Shown here: piece by piece, positions 19,992 through 44,295 of the stretch
Layout: each line of letters starts with the position of its first letter
Numbering within the stretch: the stretch's first letter is position 1
Assembly: GCA_002269645.1 (NCBI GenBank)
Contig: NIVC01001672.1
Coordinates: 252,105 to 296,399, forward strand
DNA from: Macrostomum lignano
Taxonomy: Eukaryota
DNA length: 44,295 bases
Direction: 5' to 3'
Notes under the pieces: generated by a model
Databases searched by the model: none
What the model was told of the DNA's origin: nothing
The model's input: the letters and a program-made list of their open reading frames with translations, nothing else
Position numbers and translations under genes: made by a program

Positions 19992-22202
19992 TCAGTCTCC
20001 GAGCTGCTGCCGGCCCTGCACTGCAGCGAGAGCGGCAGCGGCCAGCAGCAGCAGCGACTCGGACAGTCCACAGGCCACAGGCGCGACTCCGCTGGCCTGA
20101 TCGGACTGGAACCCGACCGGGATTTCGTTGGCCTGCAGGCTGTTGCACAGCTGGCCCACGCAGATCAGGCAGCCCGACACGAACTGCAGAGTCCGGCAGT
20201 CAAATTTGCCGCAGCCTGCCATCAGGCTGACTTTGTTAGGGGTGTCCTGCGGGGCTCAGGAGGATTGGGGGTGTCCTGCGGGGCTCAGGAGGATTGGGGG
20301 TGTCCTGCGGGGCTCAGGAGGATTGGGGGTGTCCTGCGGGGCTCAGGAGGATTGGGGTGTCCTGCGGGGCTCAGGAGAATTGGCGGGTGTCCTGCGGGGC
20401 TCAGGAGGATTTGGGATGTCCTGCGGGGTTCAGGAGGATTTGGGATGTCCTGCGGGGCTCAGGAGGATTTGGGATGTCCTGCGGGGTTCAGGAGGATTTG
20501 GGATGTCCTCCGGGGTTCAGGAGGATTTGGGATGTCCTGCGGGGCTCAGGATTTGGGATGTCCTGCGGGGCTCAGGAGGATTTGGGATGTCCTGCGGGGT
20601 TCAGGAGGATTTGGGAATGTCCCTTTTAGAGTTCCGAAGTTTCAAGAATGGCTGGGCCGTGCCTCACAGAGTAGCCAGTCGCGAAGTTGGGATCCGGTTC
20701 GGTGAGCTCAATTCGATGGCAGCTGTTGATGCCGGCACCGCAGTAGGCGGGCTCCTCCTTCACCTGCGGCACGTACTCCTTCTTGTCGCCATAGAAGATC
20801 TGCCTGACATCTCCGCTGTAGCTGTAGCACTGGCTGTGCTTCTGCTCGACTCGCTTCAACAAGCCCGTGTTGCACCTGTCTGCACCGCTGCAGACCAGGC
20901 AGTTCGACGGGTCCTGCTTGCACTCGTCGCCTTTGGCGCAGTGCGCTTCGTAAACCTGCGGCAGAGGTTAATCAGTCATCAGTTTGCACGGGGTGGGCGC
21001 GCATGGATAAATACTCTCATGCACGCACAGCTCAGACAGGGTGTACAGCGGTCCTGACTTTCTCGTTGCCAGGTATGTACACTCTCTGTGTCTCTGGGGC
21101 TGGCTCCAGGTATGTACACTCTCTGTGTCTCTGGGGCTGGCTTTTATGAGCCAGAACTGCACGAGTCATGAATTCGTCAGCTAGATTTTGTTCTAAACTA
21201 GCCAGGGACCGGAGGGTAAAAAGAGGCAGGGACTGGAGGGTCAGAGAGGCAGGGACTGGAGGGTAAAAAGAGGCAGGGACTGGAGGGTCAGAGAGGCAGG
21301 GACTGGAGGGTAAAAAGAGGCAGGGACTGGAGGGTCAGAGAGGCAGGGACTGGAGGGTAAAAAGAGGCAGGGACTGGAGGGTCAGAGAGGCAGGGACTGG
21401 AGGGTAAAAAGAGGCAGGGACTGGAGGGTAAAAAGAGGCAGGGACTGGAGGGTAAAAAGAGGCAGGGACTGGATGGTAAAAAGAGACAGGGACTGGAGGG
21501 TCAGAGAGGCAGGGACTGAAGGGTAAAAAGAGGCAGGGACTGGAGGGTAAAAAGAGGCAGGGACTGGATGGTAAAAAGAGACAGGGACTGGAGGGTCAGA
21601 GAGGCAGGGACTGGAGGGTAAAAAGAGGCAGCGACTGGAGGGTAAAAAGAGGCAGGGACTGGAGGGTCAGAGAGGCAGGGACTGGAGGGTAAAAAGAGGC
21701 AGGGACTGGAGGGTCAGAGAGGCAGGGACTGGAGGGTAAAAAGAGGCAGGGACTGGAGGGTAAAAAGAGGCAGGGACTGGAGGGTCAGCGAGGCAGGGAC
21801 TGGAGGGTCAGAGAGGCAGGGACTGGAGGGTCAGAGAGGCAGGGACTGGAGGGTCAGAGAGGTAGGGACTGAAGGGTCAGAGAGGCAGGTGTCCCGCACA
21901 GGCGAAGTCGCAGTACAGCCTCACGAGAGTCCTCTCATCGCTGGCCAGCTGGATTCTCTCGAAGCAGCCGGTGTGGAAGGAGGCGCAGGGCTCCGAGTAG
22001 TTTTGCTGGCTGAAGTCCACGGCAACCAGGCATTCCAAGGACGCTGCTCTGTCTGCAGTTTCGCCAGGTTCAACGAGTACGAGCTACCATGAGTGGTTCG
22101 ACGAACCTGGAATATTAGAATCGAATCGAGCTGATAAGGGAGAAACTTACGAATGGCTGCAGAAAGGATGATCAAACATGCGATAAGCTGATTGAGCTGC
22201 AT
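19992..22202 (-). CDS. Secreted, probably GPI-anchored Ly6/uPAR (three-finger) protein with two LU domains, 240 aa
   Basis: Exons (minus) 22202-22151, 22052-21925, 20955-20668 and 20246-19992 total 723 nt in frame. Signal peptide MQLNQLIACLIILSAAIHRAAS. LU1 is LEC...PC...GC...HC...EC...NCLVCSGADRCN. LU2 is QCY...YC...SC...GC...DC...GCLICVGQLCN. A Ser/Gly linker and a hydrophobic tail (LLLLAAAALAAV) follow. The 22052 acceptor has a weak pyrimidine tract. Confidence 0.82.
20240..20620. repeat. ~29-30-bp minisatellite (ggggctcaggaggattgggggtgtcctgc) in LU-gene intron 3
   Basis: Tandem units; the last unit overlaps the splice acceptor. Confidence 0.95.
21020..21105 (-). mobile_element. Short degenerate fragment of the same SINE family
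   Basis: gcacgcac...cagggtgtacagcgg...aggtatgtacact aligns to 37322-37400. Similar short fragments lie at ~32628-32680 (-) and ~38224-38245 (+). Confidence 0.55.
21205..21890. repeat. 24-bp purine-rich minisatellite (gaggcagggactggagggt[aaaaa/cagag]) in LU-gene intron 2
   Basis: About 28 units of two alternating variants. Confidence 0.95.
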
Positions 22203-23525: not shown

Positions 23526-24151
23526 CACCTTGGTTCCTGCTCATTAAGCAGCAAGCAGCTCAAAAAGCATTTCTGAAATTGGTGTTGAAATGTTCAGCCC
23601 AGCATTGCAACAATTATTGTTACACCGAAATCAATTTTTGATTCGTGACTGTAAAAATTGAAATGTCTATTTTTACAGCACCTGCAGACTATTGATTTGC
23701 AATTATCTTTTGCGCATTGAGCTGCTGCGGGTCTCAGCCCTAAAACTGATTGACTTTGGCAGTTAAACGGCTGGCCGACAGCTCAAACGCCGCCAGCTTC
23801 TCTGCCCCTCCATCACTGCGAGGCCGGGCCCAATGCTTTGAGCCGGCCTGAGCACAAGCCTCCAGTCAGCCCAGCATGCAGCCAGGTGACTGGCCGTGCA
23901 AAATTTATTGTAATTGCATGCATCTCTCGCCTTATCTGCCTGAGCCAAAGGTTGCGGCATCCCAGCCTCCGCTGGGTGGGCGATGTTGCTGGAAAACAAT
24001 CCACTTTGGCCAATTACCTGCATGCTGAGCGGCCCGGCAAAGAGGTTGAAAACAACAGCATTTGTCTGGGAAAACCTGCCCCATGTTTTTGCGCGGCGCT
24101 GACCCGTGAGACAGACGGACGCCTGAAAGTCACTGACTGCCTTGAGCTGAA

Positions 24152-27100
24152 ATGAGCGCAGCAGCTCAGACGCCGAGCGGCAACGCTGTCGTTGCCGACT
24201 CCTCACGCAGCGACAGGAATCTGCGCCAGTTCGTGGCCAGCTTCCTGGACTACACCACCGCGCACGGACTCGGTCGCTTCGCTCACCAGTCCAGCCTGCT
24301 CGGCAGGATGATCTGGCTGGCCTTCCTGCTCGGCACCTACAGCGGCTTCGTCTACCACCTGTACACCCTGTTCGGCAGGTTCCTCACCGCCCCGGTGCTC
24401 ACCACCATGACAATGTCCACGCTGTCGTACGAGTTCCCGGATGTGTACATCTGTCCCGCACAAGCCGTCACACTGAGCAGGGCCATTGAGCAGATGCCGA
24501 TAGGCCTAATCAACTGGAGAGAGAATGACAGGACAGTCCAGATCGATTTCAAGATACACTTCTATGAGTTCGACTTGGAGTCTGGGAACTACGCTGCGCA
24601 GAACAAGCCGGCGCAAGCTCTGATGAATGTGCTGCAGAGTGCCGAGAGCTCGCTCATGGCCGAGCTGCAGTTCCCCAAGAGCAGTGAGTTCCTAATATAT
24701 CTGCATCTACAAGTTCATCTTTCTCAGTATTTTATGAGTAGTTCAGTGATTCCCACTGTGCAACGAACTTCTCAGGCAGAGTGGAGTGCAGGACCACGCT
24801 CTCCGGTGAGGATTACTCGGGCAACGCCAGTGTTGCGGTTGTCTACGATCGGACGAAGATGCGAGTCACGGCTTCGAACATTTCTGGCGTGCTGCCGCCA
24901 TTCAGGACGTACAGGCAGTGCATGCAATGGAACGATGCGGCTCAGAGGCTGAGAAGTGTGAACACCAGTTTAACACACAGCCTCGCTGACCGACTGCTGG
25001 CGTTGAACTTCTCCGACAGCGAGTCTCGCTGTCGCTCCCCGCCAGGGCTCCCGCTGTCCGATTTTTTCCCCATCGCGAATCGTGAGTCAAGAGATTGTTT
25101 TGCAAGCTTTATTCGGCTTTATTCGACATTCCAACCGAACCTGGAATTACAGGCCCCACGCTGCGGCTTGTTGGTTGCTTTGAGGCGAACTTCACCGACC
25201 ATGAATTCAACTACACCTGCGACACGGAAGGCATTGTGACTCACGAGACCTGCGCTCACTGTTGCGCTTCGCTCGACTTCAGCCACATCGCGCTGCAAGT
25301 TGACAGCTGCCTGTGCGGAGCGAGTTCCCCAAGCTCCGGCAATGACAGCGGCGTCTGCAGCAGTCGCTGCGCCAGCAACGATCAGCAGCACTGCGGGTCA
25401 GCAACCGCCATCACGGTGCTGCAGCTCGGAGACACAGGTGAGTCTCTTGAATTCTTGTCAGCAGAAGCCTCTATAACTCTAGCCGAGGCTCAATCCGCTT
25501 GCAGAGCCGAGGCCGCTGCAGGTGGGAAACTTCAGCAACCTCACAGTCTTCTCGCACGGGCCCTACTGCTTCTTCACTGATGAGCGAGACAGGCTGGGCG
25601 CTGCGTTCTGCGATGTGCCCTTCTGCCGTGAGTGAGTTTGCCATACCGAGGATTATCTCCTCGGTTACACCGCACGAATGCTACACTTTTTCAGCGATGT
25701 CAGGTGCTTACGACTGCATCGTGAGCTCTGAGAACAAGACCCTTGAGCGGCTGACACGGGCCCGGTACACCGGTAGGAAAAACTACACAATCACCGGGAA
25801 GCCGTGCGTGCCGTGGAGTAAGCTGGAGAAGATACAAGAGGATACGTACATAAGAATGGGTAACTATGCGACCGCTGCATGCACAGAATGCGATAAAATG
25901 CCCGAGTTCGAATTCATATCCATGACTTGCAAACGCCGACTACTCATAGGTTACCACAAGCAGTTCGGATTTCACGTTCAGACTCCGGACTTCAATCCCA
26001 ACAGCAGCGACAATTTCTGCCGATCGGCGCAGATCGTTATCGACCACGGCTCGTACTTTAGTACGCACGAGGCTTAGTAAGAAAATCTTCCTATCGAATT
26101 CTTTCTTTGACTTCTGCTGCATAAAACTTTAAATATGTTTAACTCAGCCTCTGCTTCAATTTATAAAAACATAACTTCAGTCGCTTCGCACAAGAAATGT
26201 CTGATGTGCCGGGCTGCATCCCGGACATCATGGGCTGGGGCGGTCTCTTTGATGCTGACTTTGAGCCCTGCGAGATCCCGCTGTGTTGTAAGTCGCTTTT
26301 TCAGGGCCTTTAGAGCCCTTTGTTGAACAACCGATTGATAGGAAGTTCTCATTCAAAATATCTTTCCTGATCCCGCATTCACATAACATTTAACAGATGC
26401 CGCGGTCCCCAGCGTGACGGGCGCCGTCAGAGACTCAGTCGGCAGCCACCTGCTGGCCCGACAGTTCGGCAGCGACCTCAACGCCGGCCTCGCCGACTGC
26501 AGCTTCGCTGGCCAGAAGTGCACCAAGGACGACTTTGTGAACGTCGCCCACCCGCAGCTGGGCATGTGCCACAAGTTTCTCAAGCAGCGCTTCACCGCCA
26601 ACATGACCAGCACGCAGTTGGCGGAGAGCCAGCTGTCCATCAAGTACTTCACGGACTCGACAGACTCCAAGGGTCAGACGGTGTCCAACATCGACAAGCT
26701 GACGCGGGTAGTGCGAGACAGCCGCGGCTCCGATGCGACTCAGGTCGCATTCAAGGTGAGTCTTCGTCGGTCGCTGAGCGTCTCAATGTCTCACGCAATC
26801 TCTGAGCCTGGCTGCTCAACCGCGAACCCGCAGGCGGTCATCGTTCCGGATAGCTCGTTCCCGTGGGCCTCGAAGGGAATCGATGTGGCCACCGCTCAGC
26901 GCATGGATGTGCAGCTGAGGTTCGACAAGTACTCCAGACTGTCAACTACGTCAAGGCCCTGCCTTGAGACTACGGAGCCGATCACCTACCGACTGCCGTC
27001 ATGGAAGTCGGCTCCATTTAATGAGAACCCGGAGTGAGTCTTCATGCAGAAATATTTTATCGCCGTGAAGACTGCGCACTGACTGATCAATGATTCCCTT

Positions 27101-28278
27101 TACAGCTACAGTTTCGACTTAAATGCGGTTGCCATGGTGACTGATTGGTGGCTGAAAGTTGCCGCAATGGAAGTGCAGCTTCGAAAGCAGAAGCAAGGTG
27201 CATTGAGGTATGGACCATAGGCTTTAGCTTGTGCGAGTGTGACTGCCAGGTTTGCAAAAGTTCCACGCATTTCCCAAATTTGCAGTTCGCTGTCGGAATT
27301 CGACTCAGAATTCAAGCTGACTGACCGAGACGACTGCATCAACAGACACGTTGTGAAGAAGTTCATCGCGGAATGCCACTGCCTGCCGTCGTTCCTGCCG
27401 ATTCCGGTGGAGTACTTTTCGAATTACACCTACTGTTTTGATTTTCAAGCCGCTGGAAACGTGTCCATAGAAACGGACATGTGCTACAGAGAGCAGAAGT
27501 CGAAGGTGCTGGAGTACCAGTTTGCTGCAGTCCGGCTGTGCCAGTCTCCCTGCCGTACAGCCGAGTACAGCGTCCGCCACATCACCTATCCGTGGCCGAA
27601 CCTGAACGGTCTGCAGTCGTTCTCGTTTCTGAAAACCCTGGCCACCGCGTTTGGATACGGCAGCAACCCCAGCGGCCTGAGGGGCCTGAACAGCATCTAC
27701 AGCATCTACCTGAGATCCCTGAGGGATTCGGCCATTCCTGTCAGCAATCGGAGCGCGACAGAAATCCTGAGCTTTCAAAACGAGCTGACGGTGCTGCAGA
27801 ACCGACTGGCTCAGCTGACGGTTCAGGCCTGGACGTCATTCGGCCAGGAGATCTTGGAGGAGGAGGCCTACCCGGCCAAGAACCTCGTGGCCGACATTGG
27901 AGGTGACAATGAGCAGGTTCTGTACTCAGTGACCCTGGATCCCAAGTCTCTCAGGAATTTCAGCTTTCGCATCTCATGCCTAAAATTGCAGGTGCCTTGG
28001 GTCTTTGGTCGGGAATTTCCATTCTGACAGTTTGCGAGCTGCTCGAGCTGTTTATCTACATCGGCCTGGCCATCGGCTACAAATTCCACAGAGTCGCTGC
28101 GCCCCGCAACCGGAACAACGGCGGCCCTGGCGCCAACAACAACTTCAACAACAATTGCACCAATACCGGCAGTGTCCCAACCGTGGCCTCATCTGTTGCT
28201 GGGTGCTCGGAGATGATACAGTCGGCTGTGAGTCAGGACTCTGTCCAGGTTGAGTTGGAGTCCAATTCCAGAATGTAA
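24152..28278 (+). CDS. DEG/ENaC/ASIC-family (amiloride-sensitive type) channel subunit with kringle-WSC-kringle insert, 1069 aa
   Basis: Exons 24152-24683, 24776-25081, 25153-25437, 25505-25627, 25695-25859, 25950-26076, 26181-26287, 26397-26755, 26834-27033, 27106-27207, 27286-27902 and 27992-28278 total 3210 nt with no internal stop. Family motifs: TTAHG, TM1 (IWLAFLLGTYSGFVYHLY), FPDVYICP, CSFAGQKC..DF...GMCHKF, Cys-rich thumb (C...CHCLP...YC...C...CQSPC) and EEEAYP..NLVADIGGALGLWSGISILTVCELLE (TM2 with GxS filter). Confidence 0.93.
24776..25627 (+). other. Kringle-like domain 1 of the channel, interrupted by the WSC exon
   Basis: The N-half in exon 2 has ECRTTLSGEDYSGNAS...RQCMQWN...SRCRSPPG. 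The C-half in exon 4 has GPYCFFTD...AFCDVPFC. Together these give the six kringle Cys with the C-x-x-W, CRxP, PxC and CxVPxC landmarks. Confidence 0.75.
25153..25437 (+). other. WSC domain encoded by a single phase 1-1 exon
   Basis: LVGCFE...THETCAHCCASLDFSHIALQVDSCLCG...VCSSRCASNDQQHCGSATAITV matches the WSC pattern GC...T.E.C...C......L....C.CG...C...C......CG....V. Confidence 0.82.
25695..26287 (+). other. Kringle-like domain 2 of the channel
   Basis: YDCIV...RYTGRKNYTITGKPCVPWSKL...DNFCRS...VPGCIP...PCEIPLC fits the kringle consensus YRG..xTxSGxxCxxW / NYCRNP / PWC / CxIPxC, with expanded loops. Confidence 0.8.
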
Positions 28279-28836
28279 CGAGAAGTCGTGAATGTGGTTT
28301 GAGAATTGATGCCGGAAACTAGAAGTACAGGTGCCTGGTAATTTGTAAGGTCTCCGTAACCAGCCGATGAATATCTATTGACATCTGTTGGCCTTGCTGT
28401 GCTTGGAATTCCTATCTACTAAAGATTTATATAAGCAAAGTTTAAAGAATACAAGTATGTTTCACTCGCTTCATTTTAAATCTTTAATGACAAACCTAAC
28501 GATGTACGAGTATGTTTGGTAAGACATTTTGATGTTAGTTCTCTTCATCTGTTTGTCAGATCAGAAATAGTTTTCACAGAAACCTTTTTCCTTTGCTTAC
28601 TTGTTTTTTTCTTTTTTCCTTTCCTCTTACAAAACTTGACCTTTAAATTCTTATCGTCACTCCTGAATAAATTCGTTTTATTTAGACGTGCCTGTAGAGA
28701 CTTTTCGATCGATGGCTGCACTTTCTCGGCATCTAACTCGGAGAAGCGTCGAACTTTTTAACCCTGAAAAAGTTACTGAAACTTAATCGTGAATACCAAG
28801 ACAGACTTTATTACGCAATAAAACAGCTGCTAGTTG

Positions 28837-29367: not shown

Positions 29368-29643
29368 ACGTCACTGCTGAGGGAACGTCACTGCTGAGGG
29401 AACGTCACTGCTGAGGGAACGTCACTGCTGAGGGAACGTCACTGCTGAGGGAACGTCACTGCTGAGGGAATGTCACTGCTGAGGGAACGTCAGTGCTGAG
29501 GGAACGTCACTGCTGAGGGAATGTCACTGCTGAGGGAACGTCAGTGCTGAGGGAACGTCACTGCTGAGGGAACGTCACTGCTGAGGGAACGTCACTGCTG
29601 AGGGAACGTCACTGTTGAGGGAACGTCACTGCTGAGGGAACGT
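29368..29643. repeat. 17-bp minisatellite (aacgtcactgctgaggg)
   Basis: About 16 units. Confidence 0.96.
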
Positions 29644-29649
29644 CTGGAG

Positions 29650-30160
29650 AAGCTGGAGAATGGCGCGCTCTCGATCCGTCAGCGACCAACGTCAGGTTCC
29701 ACACACCTTCAGAAAGCAGGAGGCTAAGAAGCTGGAGTAAATGCATCGGCAGAGCAAGCTGACGGTGAAGCTTGACGCTCGATCACTGCCCGCATTGGCA
29801 TTAGGCTCCTTGGTTGGCTGCTCTCAGACCAAGGTCGCCTCGGAGGATCAGCCTGAGGATCCGATTAGGATTCTTTGAGCACCACATCGAGTCACGTCAC
29901 TATCCGAGAACGAGCTTCTTTCTCTGCTTACCGGAGCGTCACGTGCCGGAGCCATCGAGTCTCGCACCGGCTGCGAAGAAGACTGAGACAATCAGGCGGA
30001 GCATCCGTGCCCAACTTCTGTTTTTCTAGGCATGTTTTCAAAGTGGGTGAAAACTGCGGCCCTGAGTCAGATCGACATTGGGTTTTTGGCATTCTGCTCG
30101 GAGAATCAGAGCGGCAGGGATGCCCCCGAGTTCACGAGAGAGCTCAGTCTTAATGCCCTG
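29650..30160 (+). mobile_element. Possible heavily decayed Tc1/mariner transposase relic
   Basis: Remnants RVSHRLRRRLRQSG and HWVFGILLGESE..GCPRV loosely resemble Tc1 VS..TVRRRL..GL and W..V.FSDESRF..GR.RV. No TIRs were seen. Confidence 0.3.
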
Positions 30161-30500
30161 TTGCTCAGACTTCCCCATGCACTAAGCTGCCACACCAGGG
30201 AGTCAACAGCATCATTAATTTAATCAAAATTTAATCAAAATCACCTGCCACCTGCTTCGTCCACAGCGGCTGTCACGGCCTTGCAATAAAAAAATTTGAT
30301 TAGTCTAATTGGACTTCTCACTTTTAATCCTTCAAATCCATTTCAATTTGCAGATAGGTAATTTTCAGTTTTCAGCACCATATTGAAGGCAACAAGCGCT
30401 TGGTTCAGGGCGGTTTCACAAGTTTGTCTGCTTACGAGGCTGCATGGCAAACAATCGAAGTTAAAGCTCTACTCGTTTACAGGGTCTGGCAGACAGCGGG

Positions 30501-30565
30501 TAGGGTTAGGGTTAGGGTTAGGGTTAGGGTTAGGGTTAGGGTTAGGGTTAGGGTTAGGGTTAGGG
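30501..30565 (+). repeat. Interstitial telomere-type tract (TTAGGG)10
   Basis: Ten perfect TTAGGG units at 30506-30565 plus a partial unit. Confidence 0.97.
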
Positions 30566-30819
30566 GTGGCGGCGCGTTGACAATGGCGGCAGCTCGATCC
30601 TGCACTCGTCTGCAAAGTTGCCTACCAGGTTTAGCGAAATGCGCTGCTAATTTTGCCCGTCGGAGCGTTATATTGAATAGCACCAGTTAGTTGAGTGGGA
30701 AATTATGGTAGTACGCACTTGCGTACAGTGTAGTGGCAGCTTCCGTGGTTCCCTAAAGGATGGTATACAGAGCTTTGTGCAATCTGGTGGAAGCAAAGGC
30801 AACCTTAAAATCAATACCC

Positions 30820-30967
30820 GCTGTGTTCGGCTGTGGAGGCTGGCACAGCCGGACCCCAGCAAACTGGTACTCCAGCACCACCTTCGACTGTTGCTCTCTG
30901 CAGCACATGCATGTCCGTTTCCATGGACACGTTTCCAGCGGCTTGAGAATCAAAACAGTGAAGGTGT
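30820..30967 (-). pseudogene. Decayed inverted copy of part of channel exon 11 (source ~27426-27570)
   Basis: The reverse complement reads ...actgttttgattctcaagccgctggaaacgtgtccatggaaacggacat...gtcgaaggtggtgctggagtaccagtttgctggggtccggctgtgccag. It aligns directly to 27426-27570 with small duplications (catg, ggt) that shift the frame. Confidence 0.85.
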
Positions 30968-31026
30968 CAATGAACCATTCATAAAATACATGGACTGCTC
31001 AAGTAGAAGGGCAAGAAACTAAAATT

Positions 31027-31260
31027 CTTGGAAAATGTTAGGAGGCAGGTCATTAAGCTAAGAATGATATGCTATTAAAATAGATTCATAAAGCCAATGA
31101 GTCTAGTTGTTCCATTTTTATGATTATTAGGCATAGGGCATGTACGATTGTAAATGTACGTAGGATATGCAATTAGCATAGAATCCTAATTTTATACACG
31201 AAATCTATAGCTATAAGAAAGGCGAGACATATCAAAAGATGAACATTGGTCTTCCTTCTA
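31027..31260 (+). mobile_element. Internally deleted copy of the 38326-38838 element
   Basis: Starts with cttggaaaatgttaggaggcag (left-end match), then attaagctaagaatga..aatagattcataaa..caattagcata..tcctaatttt..tataagaaaggc..atatcaaaagatgaacat, matching 38588-38730. Confidence 0.6.
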
Positions 31261-31282
31261 TTAATTGGGTTGGGTTGGGTAT

Positions 31283-31500
31283 GGGTTGTAGCCTAGTGGT
31301 CAGAGCGTCGGACTCACGACTTGAAGGTCGGGGGTTCGATTCTCAACCCACTCGGAACAATTTTGTGTCCTTGAGCAAGACACTCAACTATGCATTGATT
31401 CAGTTCACCCAGCTGTAAAATGGGCACCAGCATTAGCTGGGGTAATTGAGGCTGTGTGTGGCGACCCAGTCCTTGGACTGAACAGCCGTACGCAGCCTTC
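31283..31500 (+). mobile_element. tRNA-derived SINE with CORE-like central domain (3' end uncertain)
   Basis: A box TAGCCTAGTGG (31289-31299) and B box GGTTCGATTCT (31333-31343). These are followed by gtgtccttgagcaagacactcaac...ttcacccagctgtaaaatggg, which resembles the MIR/CORE consensus GTGACCTTGGGCAAGTCACTTAAC...CTGTAAAATGGG. Confidence 0.75.
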
Positions 31501-31647
31501 AGATGCGCCGCTCAATAGCTGCGGCTGAGCTGTCGGTTGCACATCTGGCCAAACTGGGGCAAGGTGTAATCAACTATTGCTTGCTCCCTGTCACTGCGTG
31601 GAGGAGCCAGCAGCAAAATGTCTCCTCTGGCCTGGCGACGCGAAAAA

Positions 31648-32605
31648 ACATGGTAGACATGTTAGACATGGTAGACATGTTAGACATGGTAGACATGGTG
31701 GACATGGTAGACATGTTAGACATGGTAGACATGTTAGACATGGTAGACATGTTAGAACATGGTACACATGTTAGACATGGTAGACATGTTAGACATGGTA
31801 GACATGTTAGACATGGTAGACATGGCAGACATGGTACACATGTTAGACATGGTAGACATGTTAGACATGGTAGACATGGCAGACATGGTACACATGTTAG
31901 ACATGGTAGACATGTTAGACATGGTAGACATGGTAGACATGGTAGACATGTTAGATATGGTAGACATGGTACACATGTTAGACATGGTAGACATGTTAGA
32001 CATGGTAGACATGTTAGACATGGTAGACATGTTAGACATGGTAGACATGTTAGACATGGTAGACATGTTAGACATGGTAGACATGTTAGACATGGTAGAC
32101 ATGTTAGACATGGTAGACATGTTAGACATGGTAGACATGGTAGACATGGTAGACATGTTAGACATGGTAGACATGGTAGACATGGTAGATATGGTAGACA
32201 TGGTAGACATGGTAGACATGGTAGACATGTTAGACATGGTAGATATGGTAGACATGGTAGACATGTTAGACATGGTAGACATGGCAGACATGGTACACAT
32301 GTTAGACATGGTAGACATGTTAGACATGGTAGACATGGTAGACATGGTAGACATGTTAGATATGGTAGACATGGTACACATGTTAGACATGGTAGACATG
32401 TTAGACATGGTAGACATGTTAGACATGGTAGACATGTTAGACATGGTAGACATGTTAGACATGGTAGACATGTTAGACATGGTAGACATGGTAGACATGG
32501 TAGACATGTTAGACATTTTAGACATGGTAGACATGTTAGACATGGTAGACATTTTTGACATGTTAGACATGGTAGACATTTTTGACATGTTAGACATGGT
32601 AGACA
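31648..32605. repeat. 9-bp minisatellite (tagacatg[g/t])
   Basis: About 105 units; produces the spurious MVDMLD, RHVRHG and MSTMSN ORFs. Confidence 0.97.
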
Positions 32606-33554
32606 TTACAAGCGCGCCAACACTGTACGCAGGCACGCACTCATACACGCTCACACAGGGTGTACAGCGGCTCTGGCTTTCTAATCGTCAGGCTTGTAGT
32701 CTCTGCGCCTTGGTGGTTGGTCCTCATGCGATTGAATCGCACAGAAATCCCCGACAGCCGAATGAATGCCATGGGTCGCAGAGTGAGAGCCGGATGCTCA
32801 ACTCCTCAGCCGATGCTTGATGTGGTTATGATTAACGCGTTAGGACAGCTGGCTACTTAAACAGCATTACGTACTACTATAAAGAGTAGCAACCTGGCAT
32901 GTCGCTCTACTTCTACTAGCATAGTGGTCCTCGTTACCCCAGCATGTTTAAAGCTGCTGATTGCAAACTAGCTCGTAGAACTGTAGTGTGCTCTGCATAT
33001 GAGAAGTACTTTTCCGCACTCGAGCACTTTGGAAGGAAATTTTTTCGAGTCTGCACGATTCATCATCGTCTATTGGGACAGTTGCTGGCGCCAATTATTG
33101 GGCTTAAAAATCGAGCGAAATCGAAACCGCGCGCATTTTGCATAATTTTATAGGCATGCTGTGCGGCTTACTGATTGCTGACGGACACCCGCGAATCCAG
33201 CGAGGAGGCCAGGATCACGCCTCGCTTGTGCACAGAGCATTTGAGACAAGCCCCCGGCACATTTTCGGAATCAAACCCAGGTACTTTGGTGGATGTGTCG
33301 GACTTCATCAGAATCTGATTTTGAATTCTGATTTAAGTTACTTATACTGCCCCCGCCGCGTGCGCAGGCAGCGATGCCATCCAATGTGAAGCCCTGGGAG
33401 ACTGGGAATCCAAGAGGACAGAGCACATCGAACCCATTGAGCAGAGCTGCATGCTCACTGGAAAGCCGGATGTACTTTTTGTTGGTGCTGGTCTGGCCAT
33501 CTGTATGAGCTGCTGCCCAGCCCAGACAGAGACGCGAAAGTCAGCAGCGGGACT

Positions 33555-33890
33555 GATGTCGCTTTTGTTGTATTTTAGTTCTCGGACCTCCTGTAGTTAC
33601 AGTGATGTCGCTTTTGTTGCATTTTAGTTCTCTGACCTCCTGTAGTTACAGTGATGTCGTTTTTGTTGCATTTTAGCTCTCTGACCTCCTGTAGTTACAG
33701 TGATGTCGTTTTTGTTGCATTTTAGTTCTCTGACCTCCTGTAGTTACAGTGATGTCGCTTTTGTTGCATTTTAGTTCTCTGACCTCCTGTAGGTACAGTG
33801 ATGTCGTTTTTGTTGCATTTTAGCTCTCTGACCTCCTGTAGGTACAGTGATGTCGCTTTTGTTGCATTTTAGTTCTCTGACCTCCTGTGG
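33555..33890. repeat. 49-bp minisatellite (gatgtcgcttttgttgcattttagttctctgacctcctgtagttacagt)
   Basis: About 7 units. Confidence 0.95.
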
Positions 33891-34519
33891 GTACAATCTG
33901 TTTTATTTCTGCACTACATACATGTAACTGCAGCCCGTGCTGTGAATGCGGTCCCCACTCTGACTTTCGCTCTGTTGCAGCATCTTCAGAATCTCAGCTC
34001 AGTAGTCCGCGCTCGCCTCACACAATTCTATGTCTCGCTAATGCATTGAATGCTACACATTTCATTGGTAAATGGCTATATGCCAATTGTTATCAGTTAA
34101 TTATGATTAGGGAACAATGAGTATGGAGTTTGAGGACTGTGAGGGACAAGTGGGTGGTCAGCGGTGTGCAAGTGGGTGGTCAGGGGTTCAGTGGAATGCG
34201 CATGACTGCTGCCCCTTCACCGGCTTTGAGTCGACTGTCGCCTCGCGGTAGTGCCTCAAGCCCCATGATCAAACTAAATTGGATGACTGCTCTCTGGCTT
34301 AGTCTGAGTGCTTCTGCCTGCCCTCTGGCTTCATTTTCAGTTGCCTGTCGGCTCACTGGCTCTCCTGTGCGGCAGTGCAGTTTTGTTCACTATGGAATTA
34401 GCTCGGAATTAAATAAATCTTATTAATTAGTTTTTTCGAAGTCCAGAGCCGGTCTTTGACGCTCTCAGCTTATCAACCTTTGTTGCTTGTCTGCTTGCTC
34501 GAAGACTGCTCACAGCGGA

Positions 34520-35000
34520 ATTTTCGAAATCATGTTAAAAGCACAAAAGCCCCGAGCATCCAGATCTGTATCGATGCTGCTGGAGTGGCAGAGCTCATTT
34601 CTAAGAATAACAAGCAACAACTCGATCAGAGCTGCTTCTTTTGCAAGCTTTTTCTTGACTCATGAAAATTTCTGCCCAGATTCTGCCGGCTGAGGCGCTC
34701 GCAGGATGGATCATCCTCGCAATGGCTCGGGCCTGTGTGCGTCAGGCCCGACTTCAGATGGTGGCAGATACGGAAAAGCTATTAAAAATATTTATCCATG
34801 GAGTGCACCGGAACAGCACAGTGCAGTGAGGCGGCTAATAGATGTAGGCCAAGAGTTTTTAAAAGTACAATCATGAGACTTCTCTTGGTAGACGTGGGAC
34901 ACGATAGCAAAGACAGGGACAAGAACCAATAAGAAGATGGAACACTTTCGAGAACTTCTTCACCAGCAGTCTGTCGACCAGGCTTCCTGCTCCGCTAATC
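34520..35000 (+). mobile_element. Decayed RTE-clade LINE ORF2 fragment (endonuclease-RT linker)
   Basis: Frameshifted remnants QMVADT..AIKNIYP and RW-EHFRELLHQQSVD resemble the RTE linker motifs AD...F..A.K.IYGP and RWKEHFEELLN. Recognised by eye only. Confidence 0.5.
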
Positions 35001-39775: not shown

Positions 39776-40859
39776 AGCAGGCCGGATTGCTATTGTGAAG
39801 TTTCAAAGGACCCGAGGGCCGGATAGAGGCTTTGCAGGCGTGAGTCTGCGGACCCCTGGTGAAGGATCTCAACGCCCTAATCTGAGTTGACGCCAAAATT
39901 ATTATTAGATATTAAAATGAAAAAATCATATAGGCAATGAAAATTAAGGACACCAAATACGAGCTATTGACACCACGCCTATTAGGCCTCCTGCGTACGG
40001 CACTCCATTGGTCATGCAGAGGTTCCCCACAAAGGCCACCAATTTCTGATCCCTGATTCCCGAAATTCCCCTCTAGATCTGCCGCCGTTCGCTGCTCAAG
40101 AGCTCAGTGACAAATATTGGCCTGCGCTAGCAGCTAGTGCAACATGTGGCAGGATATGCTTGGTGATCAATTGTCGTGTGGCTGCAAACTCTGGCGTCAG
40201 GAAACGCTTCTACGAGTAGTGCAATATTTCTAGCAGCTATTGATTTTCTAAAATATGTTTTGGGATCCCGACTGCATTCCCAATGGTTTAACCAAGAAGG
40301 TCCCGCTGGTGAACTCAATCCTACAACCGCTATTGTCACTAGATAACCTTGACGCATGTATGCACGAGTATGCACGGGCAATGTGAAAAGTACTTTATAT
40401 TGTATAAAGCTCGCACCGCCACAACCAAGCTTCATAATAATGTCACTTGCACTTCATTCATTTCTGCAGCCAAAAGACCACAGTCCACAATGCCTCGCTT
40501 AATCAACTGCATCATCCAGCAACAGCGTTCAACACTGCTGCATTCTCATGCACTCTCATGGAATTCTCCCTCACTGTTGTCCTAAGTCCTAAGATATGCA
40601 ATCTGGACCGCAAAGAAATTGGTGATTAAAATTTCTGTGTGAAAGCTTTAGTTTGAAAGCTTGTTCCCAGGGACTTCCAGGTTAGGTGAGGGCAGCGCAA
40701 AGTCAGGGTCTCCTCAATGTTTGCGGTTCTGTTTAATGTGCTGGCGGTGGCAAAGGTTAAACAACTTGGAGGACCCAAAACTAACAGCTTTAGAGAGATT
40801 TACAAGAATGGAGGCCGCACACAGGGATTGGGAGGCTCAGACTTGAGCATTATTATGCC

Positions 40860-43800
40860 TTACTGCGTCCGTATCGAGCGCGACCATCTCTGACTCCGGC
40901 CTGGCCGACTCTTCGGGCTGACCGTCGGCGTTTTTTGACTGCATCCGGGCTGCGCCTGCACTCTGGCAGCCAGCGCCTGTCCCAGGTAGATGAAGAGCTC
41001 CAGCAGCTCGCAGATAGTTAGGATTGAGATGCCGGACCAGAGACCCAGAGCTCCTGAAATTCATTTTGTATTAACGGTTTTTCAATACTGAAAGACTTGT
41101 GAGCATGATCAACCTGGACCACTTACCCCCGATGTCGGCCACCAGGTTCTTGGCTGGGTAGGCCTCCTCCTCTGAGACTTCGTGGCGCGGGACTGCCAGG
41201 CCTGGACCGTCAGCTGAGACAGGCGGTTCTGCACGCCGCCAGCTCGCTTTCGAAGCTCTGAATTGCCTCGGTGCTCCGGTTGATGACGGAGTGTCAGAGA
41301 GGTTCTGAGCCTTAAGGTAAAGGTAGTAGATGCTTGAGGCGCCTCTCATCAAGCTGATATCGTGTCGATAGCCAAAGTCGGCGGCCAACTTCTTCAGAAA
41401 GTCGAGAGACTGCACCGAGAGCAAGTTCGGCCACGGGTAGGTGATGTAGCGGGTGCTGAAGTCGGTCTTGCTGCAGGGCGACTTGCATTCGTTCATGGCT
41501 TCAAAATGGTACTGCGTGATCTTCGACACCTGCTCAATGTAGCACTTCTCAGTGTTGGCCGAAATGTTTCCCCTTGAGTACATGTCGAAGCAGTAGCTGA
41601 GCTTTTTGAACCGCTCTTCTTGAATGGGAAGCATCCCCGGCAGGCATCGGCAGGTGTTGGTGAATTTTTCGACAACATAAGTGTTGACGCAGTTCTCTCT
41701 GTCCGAGACTTTGAACTGACTACCCGAGACTGTCAGTGCGCTGAAGTCATGGAATTAAAATTATTGCAAAATTCGATTTGACATGCTGAAATTCCCAGAA
41801 GCAGAGAAGCGCGAAAAAGGAGGGTTTTATGCAAAATCTTACCTTGAGCCGTTCAGTTTAAGCAGCGCGTTGCGCAACATAGACAGCTTCAGCGTCCAGT
41901 TGGAAGATCGCATAATTTCCTGCGCATCCGAGTTGACGCTGGAAGCAAATTTTTAGTTTTAAACAGCTTTGATATTTACAATATTGCAGACTAAAGATAA
42001 GGAAATAAAACTTTTTGCTTTCTTTACCCAGAGTCCTCATTTGACGTAAACAGCTTCCATGACGGCAGTCGGTAGGTGATCGGCTCCGTAGTCTCAAGGC
42101 AAGGCCTCGATGAGGTGGACAGTCTGGAGTACTTGTCGAATCTAAGATGCACGTCCATGCGCTGAGCGGTGGCCACATTGACGCCGTTCGAGGCCCACGG
42201 GAACGAGCTATCCGGGACGATGACCGCCTGCGGGTTCGCGGTTGAGCAGCCAGGCTCAGAGATTGCGTGAGACACTGAGACGCCCAGCGACCGATGAAGA
42301 CTCACCTTGAATGCGACCTGAGTCGCATCGGAGCCGCGGCTGTCTCGCACCACCCGCGTCAGCTTGTCGATGTTGGACACCGTCTGACCCTTGGAGTCTG
42401 TCGAGTCCGTGAAGTACTTGATGGACAGCTGGCTCTCCGCCAACTGCGTGCTGGTCATGTTGGCGGTGAAGCGCTGCTTGAGAAACTTGTGGCACATGCC
42501 CAGCTGCGGTGGGCGACGTTCAAAAGTCGTCCTTGGTGCACTTCTGGCCAGCGAAGCTGCACTCGGTGAGGCCGGCGTTGAGGTCGCTGCCGAACTGTCG
42601 GGCCAGCAGGTGCTCACCGACGGAGTCTCTGATTGTGGCTGTCACGCTGGGGACCTCGGTGTCTAAAGAAATTCATTCGTACAGAATGCACTGAAAACAA
42701 TGCCTAGAATATAATAATAAATAATAACGAGAAACAGATCCAGCTCAATTGTCACTGGCGCAACTCACAACAGAGTGGCACATTACAGGTCTGAAAGATC
42801 ATGTTAAACAGGTAGCCAAATTTTATCGTAATGGACGGAATGTTGCCCAGAAATCTTCCGGAATGCACACAGGAACCTCCGAATCGATGGCGCTAAACCG
42901 CCTAAAATAATAGGAAAGATTTTGGAGCGCTGCAACAAGCACACATACGCTACTTGCGATGCAATACGAAGCTTACTGGAAGTCCTTGGGCCCGTGGATG
43001 TTGACAGAATCGACCACAACGCTAACCGGACGGCAGTAATTGTCGCTCTCGCCTTCAAGCCTGTCCGGAGTCTGGATAAGCATTTCCCGCACTTCGTCCA
43101 TGAAGCCAACTTCCGAACCTAAATTGAATTTGACTGGTTCGATCAGGCGAAATTAAATTTGCCAGCGGCACAGGTGAGCAATGCAATCGAAGCTCTTACC
43201 GCGGCGCGCCTTGAGAACTTGCTCAATTGTGGACAGCTGACTCCAGGGCATGCACCGCCGGCCAGTGCTGGTGACGTTCCGACGTCCGGTGTAGCGCGAC
43301 AGCCTTTGCTGCTGAGTCAGCTTGTCCTCGGAGCTCACGATGCAGTCGTAGTTCTCGAAATTTCTGGATTGAGCGATGGAACGTCAAGTATTTCATTCAC
43401 GAATCGAAGTCGTCTTGAAAGGAAAAGTCAGGCAACATGTTGGAAACTCACGGCAGTAGGGAATTTCGCAGAATGCAGCGTTCAGCTTGTCGCTCAGCTC
43501 ATCCGCGAAAAAGCAGTAGGGCCCGCTGGAGATTGCGTCCAGGTCGCTGAAGTTTGCGACGTGCAACGGCCTGCTGCCTACAAAGTGGAATGCGTGCCTT
43601 GAGCTGCGAGTTACGAGTCTGCAGAATGACCTGATTTTGCCAGCAATATACAAGTGACCATAAAAATCTGTCCCAGTCGTCAACTTATCGGTTTTATTGA
43701 GCTACTTTTGAGTAGCAACCAATCTCTAACCCGCTCTCCGACTATCCCACCTACCGTTGTCCCGAATCTGCAGAACAGTGACGGCAGTTTCCGATCCACA

Positions 43801-44295
43801 GATTGCCGAATTGTCGTGGAGGCAGGAGGCGTTGCACACGCTGCTGCTGTTCTCGTAGCCGCCAATGCTGCTCCCGCAGAAGCAGTCCTGGCGGCTGATC
43901 GCCATGTACTGGAAGCTGCGCCTGCCGCAGCATTCAGCGCAGGTTCGAGCGAGCTCAAGCCGCCCCGGTAGCAGGTGAAGTTGAACGAACTCGAGTTGGT
44001 CAGCGCAAGGGGAAGGCAGCCGGCGTGCCGAAACACCGAGCCTGTGGTGTTGGCAGGACCGGAAATCTCCATCCGTGTGACCTGATCGAGACAAACAAAT
44101 CGGACAAACAGATGGAAACTCACGGCTAGCGATAGGAAAGAACTCAGACAGAGGCAGCCCAGGCGGCGAGCGGCACCGGGACTCGCTGTCTGAAAAGTTC
44201 AGCGCCAGCAGTCTGTTAGCCAGGCCACTTTCGCCGAGGCTCAGCAGTTTTTGAGCTGCATCGTCCACCTCATGCACTGCTTGACGCCTCTGTAC
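40860..44295 (-). CDS. Second DEG/ENaC subunit with the same kringle-WSC-kringle insert; 5' part lies beyond the window; frameshifted as assembled (sequence errors or pseudogene)
   Basis: Exons (minus) >44295-44124, 44041-43755, 43577-43452, 43363-43200, 43118-42977, 42901-42769, 42662-42306, 42227-42028, 41938-41843, 41740-41127 and 41053-40860, at the same intron positions and phases as the 24152-28278 gene. Motifs: SRCRSPPG, WSC (HAGC...RTCAECC...CFCG...CNASC...ICGS), GPYCFF...CEIPYC, RYTGRRNVTSTGRRCMPW, DNYCRP, NLVADIGGALGLWSGISILTICELLE. At least 9 one-base deletions must be corrected. Confidence 0.85.

What the first reader, a model, noticed from the sequence alone, without database searches (positions are those of the whole stretch)
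24152..28278. DEG/ENaC channel subunit with a kringle-WSC-kringle cassette in its extracellular finger region
Seen: between FPDVYICP and CSFAGQKC, about 370 aa (exons 2-7, 24776-26287) encode two kringle-like domains and a WSC domain. The whole cassette is bounded by phase-1 introns and the ORF is intact (1069 aa). Established: this variable finger segment holds the protease-released inhibitory (GRIP) region of ENaC and shapes ligand sensitivity in ASIC and FaNaC. Kringles bind proteins or lysine, WSC domains are putative carbohydrate-binding modules, and the kringle+WSC pair is known from the Kremen receptors. I know of no characterised DEG/ENaC with this architecture. Inference: a receptor-channel chimera gated or tethered by a protein, glycan or matrix ligand, for chemo- or mechanosensing.
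Basis: partly seen in the sequence, partly recalled or inferred. Interest (0 to 1): 0.92.

Follow-up and report, generated by a model that had tools for sequence, protein, structure and literature searches.

The report
Flatworm sodium channel carrying kringle/WSC module
This is an intact gene from the flatworm Macrostomum lignano for a DEG/ENaC-type sodium-channel subunit. Its outer "finger" region has gained a 371-residue cysteine-rich module (one kringle interrupted by a WSC domain, then a second kringle), an arrangement found only as uncharacterised database predictions and of unknown function.

Summary
A 12-exon, GT-AG gene (24152-28278, +) gives an intact 1069-aa protein. Pfam ASC scores E 3.8e-39, and the HG, FPxxxxC and GxS pore motifs are present. 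Exons 2-7 (24776-26287, aa 178-548) are a cassette bounded by phase-1 introns.

The WSC domain passes Pfam's cut-off when scanned alone. Both kringles fall below Pfam's cut-off, but profile-profile comparison supports them (probability 96.5% and 97.4%).

One correction: the WSC exon lies inside kringle 1, between its third and fourth cysteines. The order is K1-N | WSC | K1-C | K2.

The window is Macrostomum lignano DNA (98-99% identical to NIVC01004126.1). The cassette occurs in at least 7-8 paralog lineages (31-57% identity across the aligned members). All cassette cysteines scored, and the exon boundaries, are conserved. A second copy lies tail-to-tail in this window.

In a search of 1.84 billion representative proteins, every cassette-bearing protein traced to a source is from M. 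lignano. They are unnamed or auto-named "WSC domain-containing protein". No paper describes them.

Function is inferred only. The likely role is a built-in binding or tether module on the gating finger. The kringles lack the lysine-binding pocket, and there are no conserved furin sites. Both structure predictions failed (pLDDT 52 and 43).

This is a new variant of a known kind, of moderate to high interest.

The parts
24152..24683 (+). Exon 1 (aa 1-177 plus 1 base): cytoplasmic N-terminus with the HG motif (TTAHGLGRF), TM1, the post-TM1 strand FPDVYICP, and the N-terminal 75 aa of the finger. Ends in phase 1.
   Evidence: model; Pfam ASC; invariant H38, G39, F95-P102 across paralogs; aligned to the FaNaC, ENaC and ASIC5 N-terminal parts.
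24776..25081 (+). Exon 2 (aa 178-279), phase 1-1: N-terminal half of kringle 1 (Cys1 C182, Cys2 C226 in CMQW, Cys3 C263 in CRSPPG). It has a 22-residue extra loop after the YxG motif.
   Evidence: hhalign to canonical kringles, probability 96.5%, E 9.5e-10, kringle motifs and cysteines aligned; these Cys invariant in 6 paralogs.
25153..25437 (+). Exon 3 (aa 280-374), phase 1-1: WSC domain (10 Cys), inserted in the Cys3-Cys4 loop of kringle 1.
   Evidence: Pfam WSC 33.2 bits alone, cut-off 27.8; 26 bits to the Kremen1 WSC; a separate exon with the same boundaries in P0002, P0012 and P0008.
25505..25627 (+). Exon 4 (aa 375-415), phase 1-1: C-terminal part of kringle 1 (GPYCFF...AAFCDVPFC; Cys4-6 = C396, C410, C415).
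   Evidence: aligned to SPWCY...WKYCEIPAC of Kremen1 and to canonical kringles.
25695..26287 (+). Exons 5-7 (25695-25859, 25950-26076, 26181-26287; aa 416-548): kringle 2 (C423, C453, C494, C525, C543, C548), with enlarged loops. The internal junctions are phase 1 and phase 2, and the block ends in phase 1.
   Evidence: Kringle 17.4 bits; hhalign probability 97.4%, E 1.5e-11; Kringle is the only Pfam hit in all 6 paralog K2 segments.
26397..27207 (+). Exons 8-10 (26397-26755, 26834-27033, 27106-27207; aa 549-768): C-terminal part of the finger, the CSFAGQKC strand, and the beta-ball and palm. Bases 26400-27007 form a gene-conversion tract shared with the neighbouring paralog.
   Evidence: CSFAGQKC aligned to CHYAGHRC of FaNaC1 and CFFDGVSC of gamma-ENaC; 94.4% nt identity over 608 nt, intron included.
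27286..28278 (+). Exons 11-12 (27286-27902, 27992-28278; aa 769-1069): Cys-rich thumb, lower palm, TM2 with GALGLWSGIS (GxS filter) and ELLE, cytoplasmic tail, stop codon at 28276-28278.
   Evidence: best ASC stretch 783-994; TM2 aligned to FaNaC, ENaC, ASIC; hydrophobic peak 970-1004.
40858..44295 (-). Second family member (close variant of Mlig006056/P0002), tail-to-tail with the first gene and cut off by the window end. It carries the same K1-N/WSC/K1-C/K2 cassette.
   Evidence: 93-100% aa identity per exon piece to P0002; 98.7% nt identity to NIVC01004126.1.

Best explanation
SHOWN. The locus is an intact gene for a DEG/ENaC subunit. It belongs to a divergent clade that, for every member traced to a source, is from Macrostomum lignano. 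The protein keeps the channel hallmarks: the pre-TM1 HG motif, FPxxxxC, a Cys-rich thumb, and a GxS filter in TM2.

The helical finger, which is the outer upper corner of the ectodomain, is split by a 371-aa cassette with 22 cysteines and 12 N-glycosylation sequons. The cassette is a kringle whose Cys3-Cys4 loop contains a WSC domain, followed by a second kringle. K1-N, WSC and K1-C are each a separate phase 1-1 exon. Their boundaries are the same in paralogs that share only about 33-57% identity.

INFERRED, origin. The modules arrived by exon shuffling before the family expanded, with the WSC exon dropping into an intron inside kringle 1.

INFERRED, mechanism. A trimer would carry three such modules on the periphery. 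In Kremen1 the kringle and WSC together form one protein-binding face. In other DEG/ENaCs, movement of the finger drives the thumb and wrist to open the pore. The most likely role is therefore a built-in binding or tether module for a protein, glycan or matrix partner, whose occupancy or pull biases finger-thumb gating. This would give the family a sensory (chemo- or mechano-) function.

The kringles lack the classical lysine pocket, so the partner is not a lysine side chain. Nothing indicates proteolytic release.

My confidence that the architecture is real is about 0.9. My confidence that it acts as a gating or tether receptor is about 0.35-0.4. The figure given in the confidence field is a blend of the two.
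For: - Gene model and motifs. Pfam ASC E 3.8e-39 and WSC.
- Kringle homology.
- WSC nested in K1. K1-N and K1-C align to the two halves of a single kringle.
- Conservation: every cassette cysteine scored in the family alignments is invariant. K1-N is 36-66% identical across paralogs, against 14-35% for the adjacent finger segment.
- Same exon boundaries in P0002, P0012 and P0008.
- The full-length NCBI models P0002 and P0012 contain TM1, cassette and TM2 in one product.
- Finger placement.
- The finger is the gating corner of the superfamily: PMC6197857, PMC11026163.
- The Kremen1 kringle and WSC jointly bind DKK. The WSC sheet order b1-b5-b3-b4-b2 puts its terminal strands side by side, which is compatible with insertion into a loop: PMC5014086.
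- 12 of 17 sequons and an even 22 Cys lie in the cassette, consistent with an extracellular folded module.
Against: - There is no functional, expression or reliable structural evidence. AlphaFold2 of the P0002 cassette reached mean pLDDT 51.8 and the full-length P0002 model 43.0. Foldseek found nothing.
- Both kringles fail Pfam's gathering cut-off.
- The lysine-binding residues (D55, D57, W62, R71, W72) are not conserved. This comes from reading the alignments; the list of pocket residues is from memory.
- No NCBI gene model was found for this particular paralog. The only public model, P0001, retains introns and lacks TM2. Transcription of this copy is therefore unproven.
- Skipping exons 2-7 would keep the reading frame.
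- The C. elegans EGAS channels (EGF plus ASC) gave no currents in oocytes (PMC10424705), so module-bearing DEG/ENaCs are not necessarily simple homomeric channels.
Confidence: 0.55

Rival explanations
1. The cassette is real but passive. It would be a glycosylated, disulfide-rich decoration used for folding, trafficking, subunit assembly, clustering or protection of the ectodomain, with no direct role in gating. The channels would be gated by something else (pH, peptide, constitutive leak).
For: The cassette is heavily glycosylated (12 sequons). WSC and K2 evolve fast among paralogs (25-41% identity). The finger is the most variable DEG/ENaC region and tolerates large differences (PMC11026163). 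No ligand-binding residues could be recognised.
Against: Every cassette cysteine scored, and the exon structure, are preserved across paralogs of 31-57% identity. K1-N is better conserved than the flanking finger. The insertion sits exactly in the segment that moves during gating in FaNaC and ENaC, where a 371-aa mass is unlikely to be neutral.
Confidence: 0.3
2. The cassette, or its WSC exon alone, is optional. Because the exons are phase-symmetric, the main isoform may skip exons 2-7 (or exon 3) and encode an ordinary DEG/ENaC subunit of about 698 aa.
For: Intron 1 and intron 7 are both phase 1, and exons 2, 3, 4 and 5 are each phase 1-1. Some public models of paralogs lack K1-C or part of K2 (P0007, P0003).
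Against: The full-length NCBI models of two paralogs include the whole cassette. Every family member recovered, including N-truncated models, still contains cassette sequence. The incomplete models are ab initio predictions with other obvious errors. No cassette-free relative was found.
Confidence: 0.1
3. The cassette is an autoinhibitory plug released by proteolysis, functionally analogous to the ENaC GRIP domain.
For: It occupies roughly the same finger region as GRIP, which lies between helices alpha1 and alpha2 at the periphery (PMC6197857). Kringle domains are typical of protease zymogens and their partners.
Against: There is no R-x-[KR]-R site anywhere in the protein. The few RxxR motifs in the ectodomain are inside domains rather than at the cassette borders, and from reading the paralog sequences they are not conserved. 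The module is a set of disulfide-locked domains, not a short tract.
Confidence: 0.05
4. The architecture is an annotation or assembly artefact: two genes (a secreted kringle/WSC protein and a channel) wrongly joined, or a decaying copy.
For: The neighbouring paralog in this window shows at least 8 frame disruptions. The public model for this paralog is faulty. No transcript-guided model for this copy was found.
Against: This gene is uninterrupted over 3210 nt with 11 canonical short introns. The cassette has no start codon or signal peptide of its own and lies between TM1 and TM2 on the same strand. The same arrangement and intron positions recur at four loci examined (this gene, P0002, P0012, P0008), three of them on separate contigs of another assembly. 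The inspected frame disruptions in the neighbour are 1-nt deletions in homopolymer runs.
Confidence: 0.04

Closest known systems
Predicted Macrostomum lignano proteins (UniProt A0A1I8IV52; A0A267DGV9 = PAA48513.1 Mlig006056g1; A0A267GC91 = PAA82974.1 Mlig007204g1; Mlig013355g1; Mlig034226g1; Mlig029271g1)
   Same: Same family and same architecture. P0001 is 92% identical to the window protein. P0002 is 56% identical, and a close variant of it lies in this window.
   Different: These are automatic predictions named 'WSC domain-containing protein', 'hypothetical protein', or once 'Kringle domain-containing protein'. None is characterised, and none was found in the literature searched. The closest one (P0001) retains two introns and lacks TM2, so the model built here is the better one for this paralog.
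ENaC alpha/beta/gamma subunits with the GRIP domain
   Same: A DEG/ENaC subunit with a lineage-specific insertion in the finger, at the periphery of the trimer, that controls gating (PMC6197857).
   Different: GRIP is a small beta-strand domain containing protease-released tracts. The cassette here is about 371 aa of kringle and WSC modules with no conserved cleavage sites. There is no sequence relationship between the insertions.
FMRFamide-gated channels (FaNaC; PDB 7yvb, 8on7)
   Same: These are the best solved-structure matches to the channel core (E 3.1e-23 and 7.3e-18 with the family profile). Their ligand site is formed by finger helices alpha1-alpha3, the segment interrupted here (PMC11026163).
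   Different: FaNaCs have no inserted modules. Similarity to the window protein is confined to the TM1/beta1, CxxxGxxC, thumb and TM2 regions. Other M. lignano DEG/ENaCs tested by others did not respond to FMRFamide-like peptides (PMC9234716); whether those belong to this family is unknown.
Kremen1/2 (Kringle-WSC-CUB Wnt/Dickkopf co-receptors)
   Same: Kremen1 is the top PDB hit of the cassette profile (E 1.6e-8), with matches to both its kringle and its WSC. In Kremen1 the kringle and WSC pack tightly and jointly form the DKK-binding face (PMC5014086).
   Different: Kremen is a single-pass receptor with the domains in tandem plus a CUB domain. Here there is no CUB, the WSC is nested inside a kringle, a second kringle follows, and the host is an ion channel.
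[quoted passage not shown]
   Same: These are a precedent for DEG/ENaC subunits that carry adhesion-type extracellular modules (PMC10424705). MEC-4-type channels work with extracellular matrix proteins; this last point is from my own knowledge and was not checked here.
   Different: The module type differs (EGF, or nematode-specific Cys-rich regions). The position of EGF in EGAS was not examined here. EGAS channels gave no currents in oocytes, so their function is also unknown.

Membership tests
DEG/ENaC (Pfam ASC, PF00858) | Significant match to the family profile over the N-terminal, ectodomain and TM2 parts | tested here: met
   Pfam ASC E 3.8e-39, 135 bits against a cut-off of 23.6, in 3 stretches. 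The family profile hits FaNaC, ENaC, ASIC, PPK26 and other DEG/ENaC chains in the PDB.
DEG/ENaC (Pfam ASC, PF00858) | Two membrane spans with a pre-TM1 HG motif, a post-TM1 FPxxxxC strand, and a TM2 GxxGLxxGxS...E with a GxS selectivity filter | tested here: met
   TTAHGLGRF (H38, G39 invariant) and FPDVYICP (95-102, invariant). GALGLWSGISILTVCELLE (975-993). Hydrophobic peak at 970-1004.
DEG/ENaC (Pfam ASC, PF00858) | Conserved ectodomain disulfide framework (7 bridges in ASIC and ENaC) | tested here: inconclusive
   12 Cys lie in the ectodomain outside the cassette (101, 583, 590, 606, 711, 786, 799, 801, 819, 835, 854, 858), against 14 in ASIC1 (from memory). The CxFxGxxC and thumb clusters are present, but no reliable 3D model was obtained.
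DEG/ENaC (Pfam ASC, PF00858) | Trimeric, amiloride-sensitive cation channel activity | not testable with these tools
   Needs expression and electrophysiology.
Kringle (PF00051) | Score above Pfam's gathering cut-off | tested here: not met
   K2 scores 17.4 bits (16.2 alone) against a cut-off of 34.3. K1 gives no hit, even with the WSC removed. Across paralogs, 6 of 6 K2 segments and 2 of 5 K1 segments give sub-threshold Kringle hits, and Kringle is the only family hit.
Kringle (PF00051) | Six-cysteine framework with the YxG...T..G..C..W, N(F/Y)CR and P(W)C...C.(I/V)P.C motifs in canonical order | tested here: met
   hhalign against five canonical kringles of P0009: K1 (WSC removed) probability 96.5%, E 9.5e-10, aligned over kringle positions 1-85. 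K2 probability 97.4%, E 1.5e-11. The kringle cysteines are invariant in the paralogs that include the segment. Disulfide connectivity itself is not testable here.
Kringle (PF00051) | Compact domain of about 80 residues; lysine-binding pocket (functional, in a subset of kringles) | tested here: not met
   K1 is 144 aa without the WSC and 239 aa with it; K2 is 133 aa. Positions equivalent to D55/D57/W62/R71/W72 read P/L/Y/G/A in K1 and Q/V/G/D/F in K2 (read from the sequence; the pocket definition is from memory).
WSC (PF01822) | Score above the Pfam cut-off, with the conserved cysteine pattern | tested here: met
   33.2 bits when the exon-3 peptide is scanned alone and 26.3 bits within the full protein, against a cut-off of 27.8. 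Paralog P0012 scores 39.1 bits. The cassette profile aligns with 26 bits to the Kremen1 WSC. There are 10 Cys, of which the 9 scored in the alignments are invariant.
Kremen receptors | Type-I single-pass protein with tandem Kringle-WSC-CUB | tested here: not met
   There is no CUB hit. The WSC is nested in kringle 1, and the host is a two-TM channel subunit. It shares domain types with Kremen but is not a family member.

The most novel reading that the evidence does not exclude
A family of ion channels, found so far only in Macrostomum lignano, has wired a Kremen-like kringle/WSC binding unit directly into the DEG/ENaC gating finger. This would create a new gating modality: a channel opened or biased by a macromolecular ligand (secreted protein, glycan or matrix fibre), or by tension on a built-in extracellular tether. 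The family would then have expanded to 7-8 or more paralogs as a sensory receptor repertoire. It would also be a clean natural example of double-nested domain insertion by exon shuffling (WSC within a kringle within a channel finger).
Probability: 0.25. Interest if true: 0.85.

Novelty: new variant of a known kind. Interest (0 to 1): 0.6.

Why it matters
DEG/ENaC channels are gated by very different stimuli: protons, peptides, proteases and force. How the variable finger couples a stimulus to the pore is an open question. How mechanosensitive members are tethered to the matrix is another.

This family offers a natural channel in which a recognisable protein- or glycan-binding module sits inside that finger. 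The module is conserved over many paralogs, and the host animal is reported to have RNAi, in situ and transgenesis tools (my knowledge, not checked here). That makes a defined experimental handle: delete or swap the cassette, and use it as bait to fish for partners.

The locus also documents module capture by phase 1-1 exons, including insertion of one module inside another. If the cassette turns out to be passive, the finding reduces to a lineage-specific curiosity.

Tried and rejected
- The spliced window protein could not be given to structure prediction or the search of protein representatives, which require exact contiguous window sequence. I used paralog P0002 and family alignments instead.
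- AlphaFold2 of the P0002 cassette with a 5-sequence alignment gave mean pLDDT 51.8. Foldseek of that model against the PDB found nothing with E below 1, although prothrombin kringle 2 appeared at rank 2 with probability 0.18. This was uninformative.
- AlphaFold2 of full-length P0002 with an 8-sequence alignment gave mean pLDDT 43.0 and pTM 0.30. It cannot be used to place the cassette. Only its secondary structure was noted: a long helix before the cassette and a short helix after it.
- Pfam alone does not establish the kringles.
- Word-index homology searches with the full protein and with the channel-only protein returned almost only M. lignano family members. The nearest outsider was a bivalve protein at E 1e-4. 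No cassette-free close relative was found to date the insertion.
- I looked for a donor protein with a kringle[WSC] nest outside the channel family among the top 150 profile hits. The candidates checked were plain multi-WSC or multi-kringle proteins, for example P0142 with three WSC domains.
- Literature searches found nothing relevant. I tried ENaC/kringle/WSC, Macrostomum plus DEG/ENaC terms, Mlig gene ids, and kringle plus degenerin/ASIC.
- I considered a GRIP-like proteolytic mechanism and rejected it as the main reading, because there are no conserved furin-type sites.

Full report
**Gene model**

Reading 23800-28600 and translating all three forward frames shows a run of short coding pieces separated by introns of 67-109 nt. 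Joining 12 exons gives 3210 nt and 1069 aa. The exons are 24152-24683, 24776-25081, 25153-25437, 25505-25627, 25695-25859, 25950-26076, 26181-26287, 26397-26755, 26834-27033, 27106-27207, 27286-27902 and 27992-28278.

All introns are GT-AG. The ATG at 24152 is the first one after an in-frame stop. Exons 2, 3, 4 and 5 are each phase 1-1. Exons 6 and 7 meet in phase 2. The cassette as a whole (exons 2-7, aa 178-548) is flanked by phase-1 introns.

The exon 5/6 and 6/7 junctions I chose are the same as in the NCBI model of paralog P0002.

**The channel part**

Pfam ASC matches at E 3.8e-39. The following motifs are present, and the first two are invariant in the paralogs:
- the pre-TM1 HG motif (TTAHGLGRF);
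- FPDVYICP (95-102);
- CSFAGQKC (583-590);
- a Cys-rich thumb;
- GALGLWSGISILTVCELLE in TM2, which includes the GxS filter.

With the cassette removed, the protein and the family profile find FaNaC first in the PDB (E 4.5e-14 for the single sequence, 3.1e-23 for the profile). ENaC gamma and alpha, ASIC5, PPK26 and ASIC1/2 follow. The core is therefore a genuine but very divergent DEG/ENaC.

FPDVYICP aligns to FPSISICN (ending at residue 84) of FaNaC1. CSFAGQKC aligns to CHYAGHRC (171-178) of FaNaC1 and to CFFDGVSC of gamma-ENaC. The segment between these anchors is the finger (helices alpha1-alpha3). It measures about 86 aa in FaNaC1 and 75 + 371 + 34 aa here.

The finger forms the FMRFamide pocket and starts the gating movement in FaNaC (PMC11026163). 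In ENaC it holds the GRIP domain, which lies between alpha1 and alpha2 at the periphery (PMC6197857).

**The cassette**

The exon-3 peptide scores 33.2 bits on Pfam WSC when scanned alone (cut-off 27.8) and 26.3 bits within the full protein.

For Kringle, Pfam gives only 17.4 bits for the second kringle and nothing for the first. Family-level evidence reverses that:
- I aligned the segments from the window protein and its paralogs.
- I compared them by hhalign with five canonical kringles taken from hit P0009.
- K1 with the WSC exon removed aligns over the whole kringle (positions 1-85) at probability 96.5% and E 9.5e-10.
- K2 aligns at probability 97.4% and E 1.5e-11.
- The YxG, CxxW, CRxP, PxC and CxxPxC motifs all align with their canonical counterparts.
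- A profile of the whole cassette finds Kremen1 first in the PDB (E 1.6e-8), with separate matches to its WSC and to both halves of its kringle. The tPA, HGF, prothrombin, ROR1/2 and plasminogen kringles follow.
- In the 1.84-billion-protein search, multi-kringle proteins score 1e-20 to 1e-25.
- Kringle is the only Pfam family hit by any K1 or K2 segment.

**Anatomy correction**

Exon 2 carries kringle Cys1-3, ending at CRSPPG plus 16 residues. Exon 4 carries Cys4-6 (GPYCFF...AAFCDVPFC). The WSC exon lies between them. The WSC is therefore nested in the Cys3-Cys4 loop of kringle 1, and the order is K1-N | WSC | K1-C | K2.

In Kremen1 the WSC sheet order is b1-b5-b3-b4-b2, so its first and last strands are neighbours (PMC5014086). 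That is the geometry expected for a domain inserted into a loop.

K2 also has an intron and an enlarged loop between its Cys3 and Cys4. This fits a WSC exon having landed in an intra-kringle intron, but that origin is inference.

The cassette has 22 Cys (6 + 10 + 6) and 12 of the protein's 17 N-glycosylation sequons.

I compared the positions of the classical lysine pocket (D55, D57, W62, R71, W72; residue list from memory) with the alignments. They read P/L/Y/G/A in K1 and Q/V/G/D/F in K2. Lysine binding is therefore unlikely.

The protein contains no R-x-[KR]-R site and no conserved RxxR at the cassette borders.

**Family and organism**

Window bases 30126-44295 are collinear with contig NIVC01004126.1 of GCA_002269645.1 at about 94-100% identity per aligned block, mostly 98-99%. 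The organism is therefore Macrostomum lignano, from a different haplotype, copy or assembly.

Homology searches found only M. lignano proteins with the cassette (sources):
- P0001: 92% identical, a faulty model with two retained introns and no TM2.
- P0002: Mlig006056, 1049 aa.
- P0003/P0005: Mlig013355.
- P0006/7/11/22: one lineage.
- P0008: Mlig034226.
- P0012: Mlig007204/028168, 1052 aa.
- P0014/P0170: Mlig029271.
- P0042: a 171-aa fragment.
- P0167-169: N-truncated models that still begin inside K2.

That makes at least 7-8 lineages at 31-57% identity to the window protein across the aligned members.

Conservation within the family:
- Every cassette cysteine scored is invariant.
- K1-N is 36-66% identical among paralogs. 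The neighbouring finger segment is only 14-35% identical.
- The K1-N, WSC, K1-C and K2 exon boundaries are the same in P0002, P0012 and P0008.
- Two NCBI models contain TM1, the cassette and TM2 in a single product.

This excludes a chance fusion at one locus. It also puts the acquisition before the family diversified.

No relative outside M. lignano carries the cassette among the top hits of the exhaustive profile search. That list shows only the best 150 hits, so DEG/ENaCs elsewhere with a single WSC or a single kringle cannot be excluded.

**Novelty**

The architecture is visible in public databases only as automatic names: 'WSC domain-containing protein', and once 'Kringle domain-containing protein'. 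No paper in the library links DEG/ENaC channels with kringle or WSC domains or with these gene ids.

Precedents for module-bearing or finger-decorated DEG/ENaCs exist. These are the ENaC GRIP domain and C. elegans EGAS, 'EGF plus ASC'. I therefore class this as a new variant of a known kind.

**Function**

Nothing here tests function. Both structure predictions were of low confidence, and the fold search was empty.

The best-supported reading is a built-in binding or tether module that biases finger-thumb gating. It rests on three things: the location of the insertion, the Kremen precedent of a joint kringle-WSC binding face, and purifying selection on the module.

The main rival is a passive structural or glycan-shield role. 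Optional splicing, proteolytic release and artefact are less likely, for the reasons given under each rival.

One specific caveat applies to this copy. No NCBI model of its lineage was recovered, so its transcription is unproven. From memory, the NCBI M. lignano models are transcript-guided, which would make that absence meaningful, but I did not check this.

**Side observations**

- A second family member lies tail-to-tail at about 40858-44295 on the minus strand. It is a close variant of P0002.
- That copy has at least 8 within-exon frame changes. The two I inspected are 1-nt deletions in homopolymer runs.
- The two genes share a 608-nt tract, intron included, at 94.4% identity. Their other exons are 68-80% identical. 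This indicates recent gene conversion.

Noticed in passing
window 40858-44295 (- strand, runs off the right end): A second DEG/ENaC gene with the same K1-N/WSC/K1-C/K2 cassette lies tail-to-tail about 12.5 kb from the first. It is a close variant of Mlig006056/P0002 (93-100% aa identity per exon piece; 98.7% nt identity to NIVC01004126.1). It shows at least 8 within-exon frame changes relative to P0002. The two inspected are 1-nt deletions in T- and C-runs, so they are either assembly indel errors or signs of a very young pseudogene.
   Followed up: partly
window 26400-27007 (+) versus 42659-42054 (-): The two paralogs share a 608-nt tract covering exon 8, intron 8 and most of exon 9 at 94.4% nt identity. 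Much of exon 8 is almost base-for-base identical. The other exons are 68-80% identical and the other introns do not align. This indicates recent gene conversion. The same tract matches the reference contig copy at 95.2%.
   Followed up: partly
window 30820-31020 (- strand): A short tblastn match to the thumb region of the family (41% identity over 73 aa, with a 27-aa core at 74-78%). It is probably a relic fragment of another DEG/ENaC copy between the two genes.
   Followed up: no
window 899-23527, 29368-29644, 31648-32606, 33554-33895: The flanks are packed with about 20 minisatellite arrays (periods 8-141 nt, up to 60 copies). This gives long repetitive pseudo-ORFs on both strands and strong local GC and AT skews.
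   Followed up: no
window 25860-25949 (intron 5): This 90-nt intron is open and in frame. Retaining it would add 30 aa with three cysteines that no paralog has, so I treated it as an intron. The position matches the P0002 model.
   Followed up: yes
public model P0001 (UniProt A0A1I8IV52) versus window 19997-20976 and 24152-27928: The only public protein for this paralog has three faults. It starts about 4 kb upstream in repeat DNA, it reads through introns 2 and 8, and it ends before TM2. No NCBI model for this lineage was recovered, unlike five other paralog lineages.
   Followed up: partly
aa 735-768 and 880-960 of the protein (window 27106-27207 and about 27620-27860): Even without the cassette, the ectodomain is about 527 aa, against roughly 370 aa in ASIC1 (from memory). 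It includes a poorly conserved helical stretch between palm and thumb (15-19% identity among paralogs). This suggests further family-specific elaborations.
   Followed up: no
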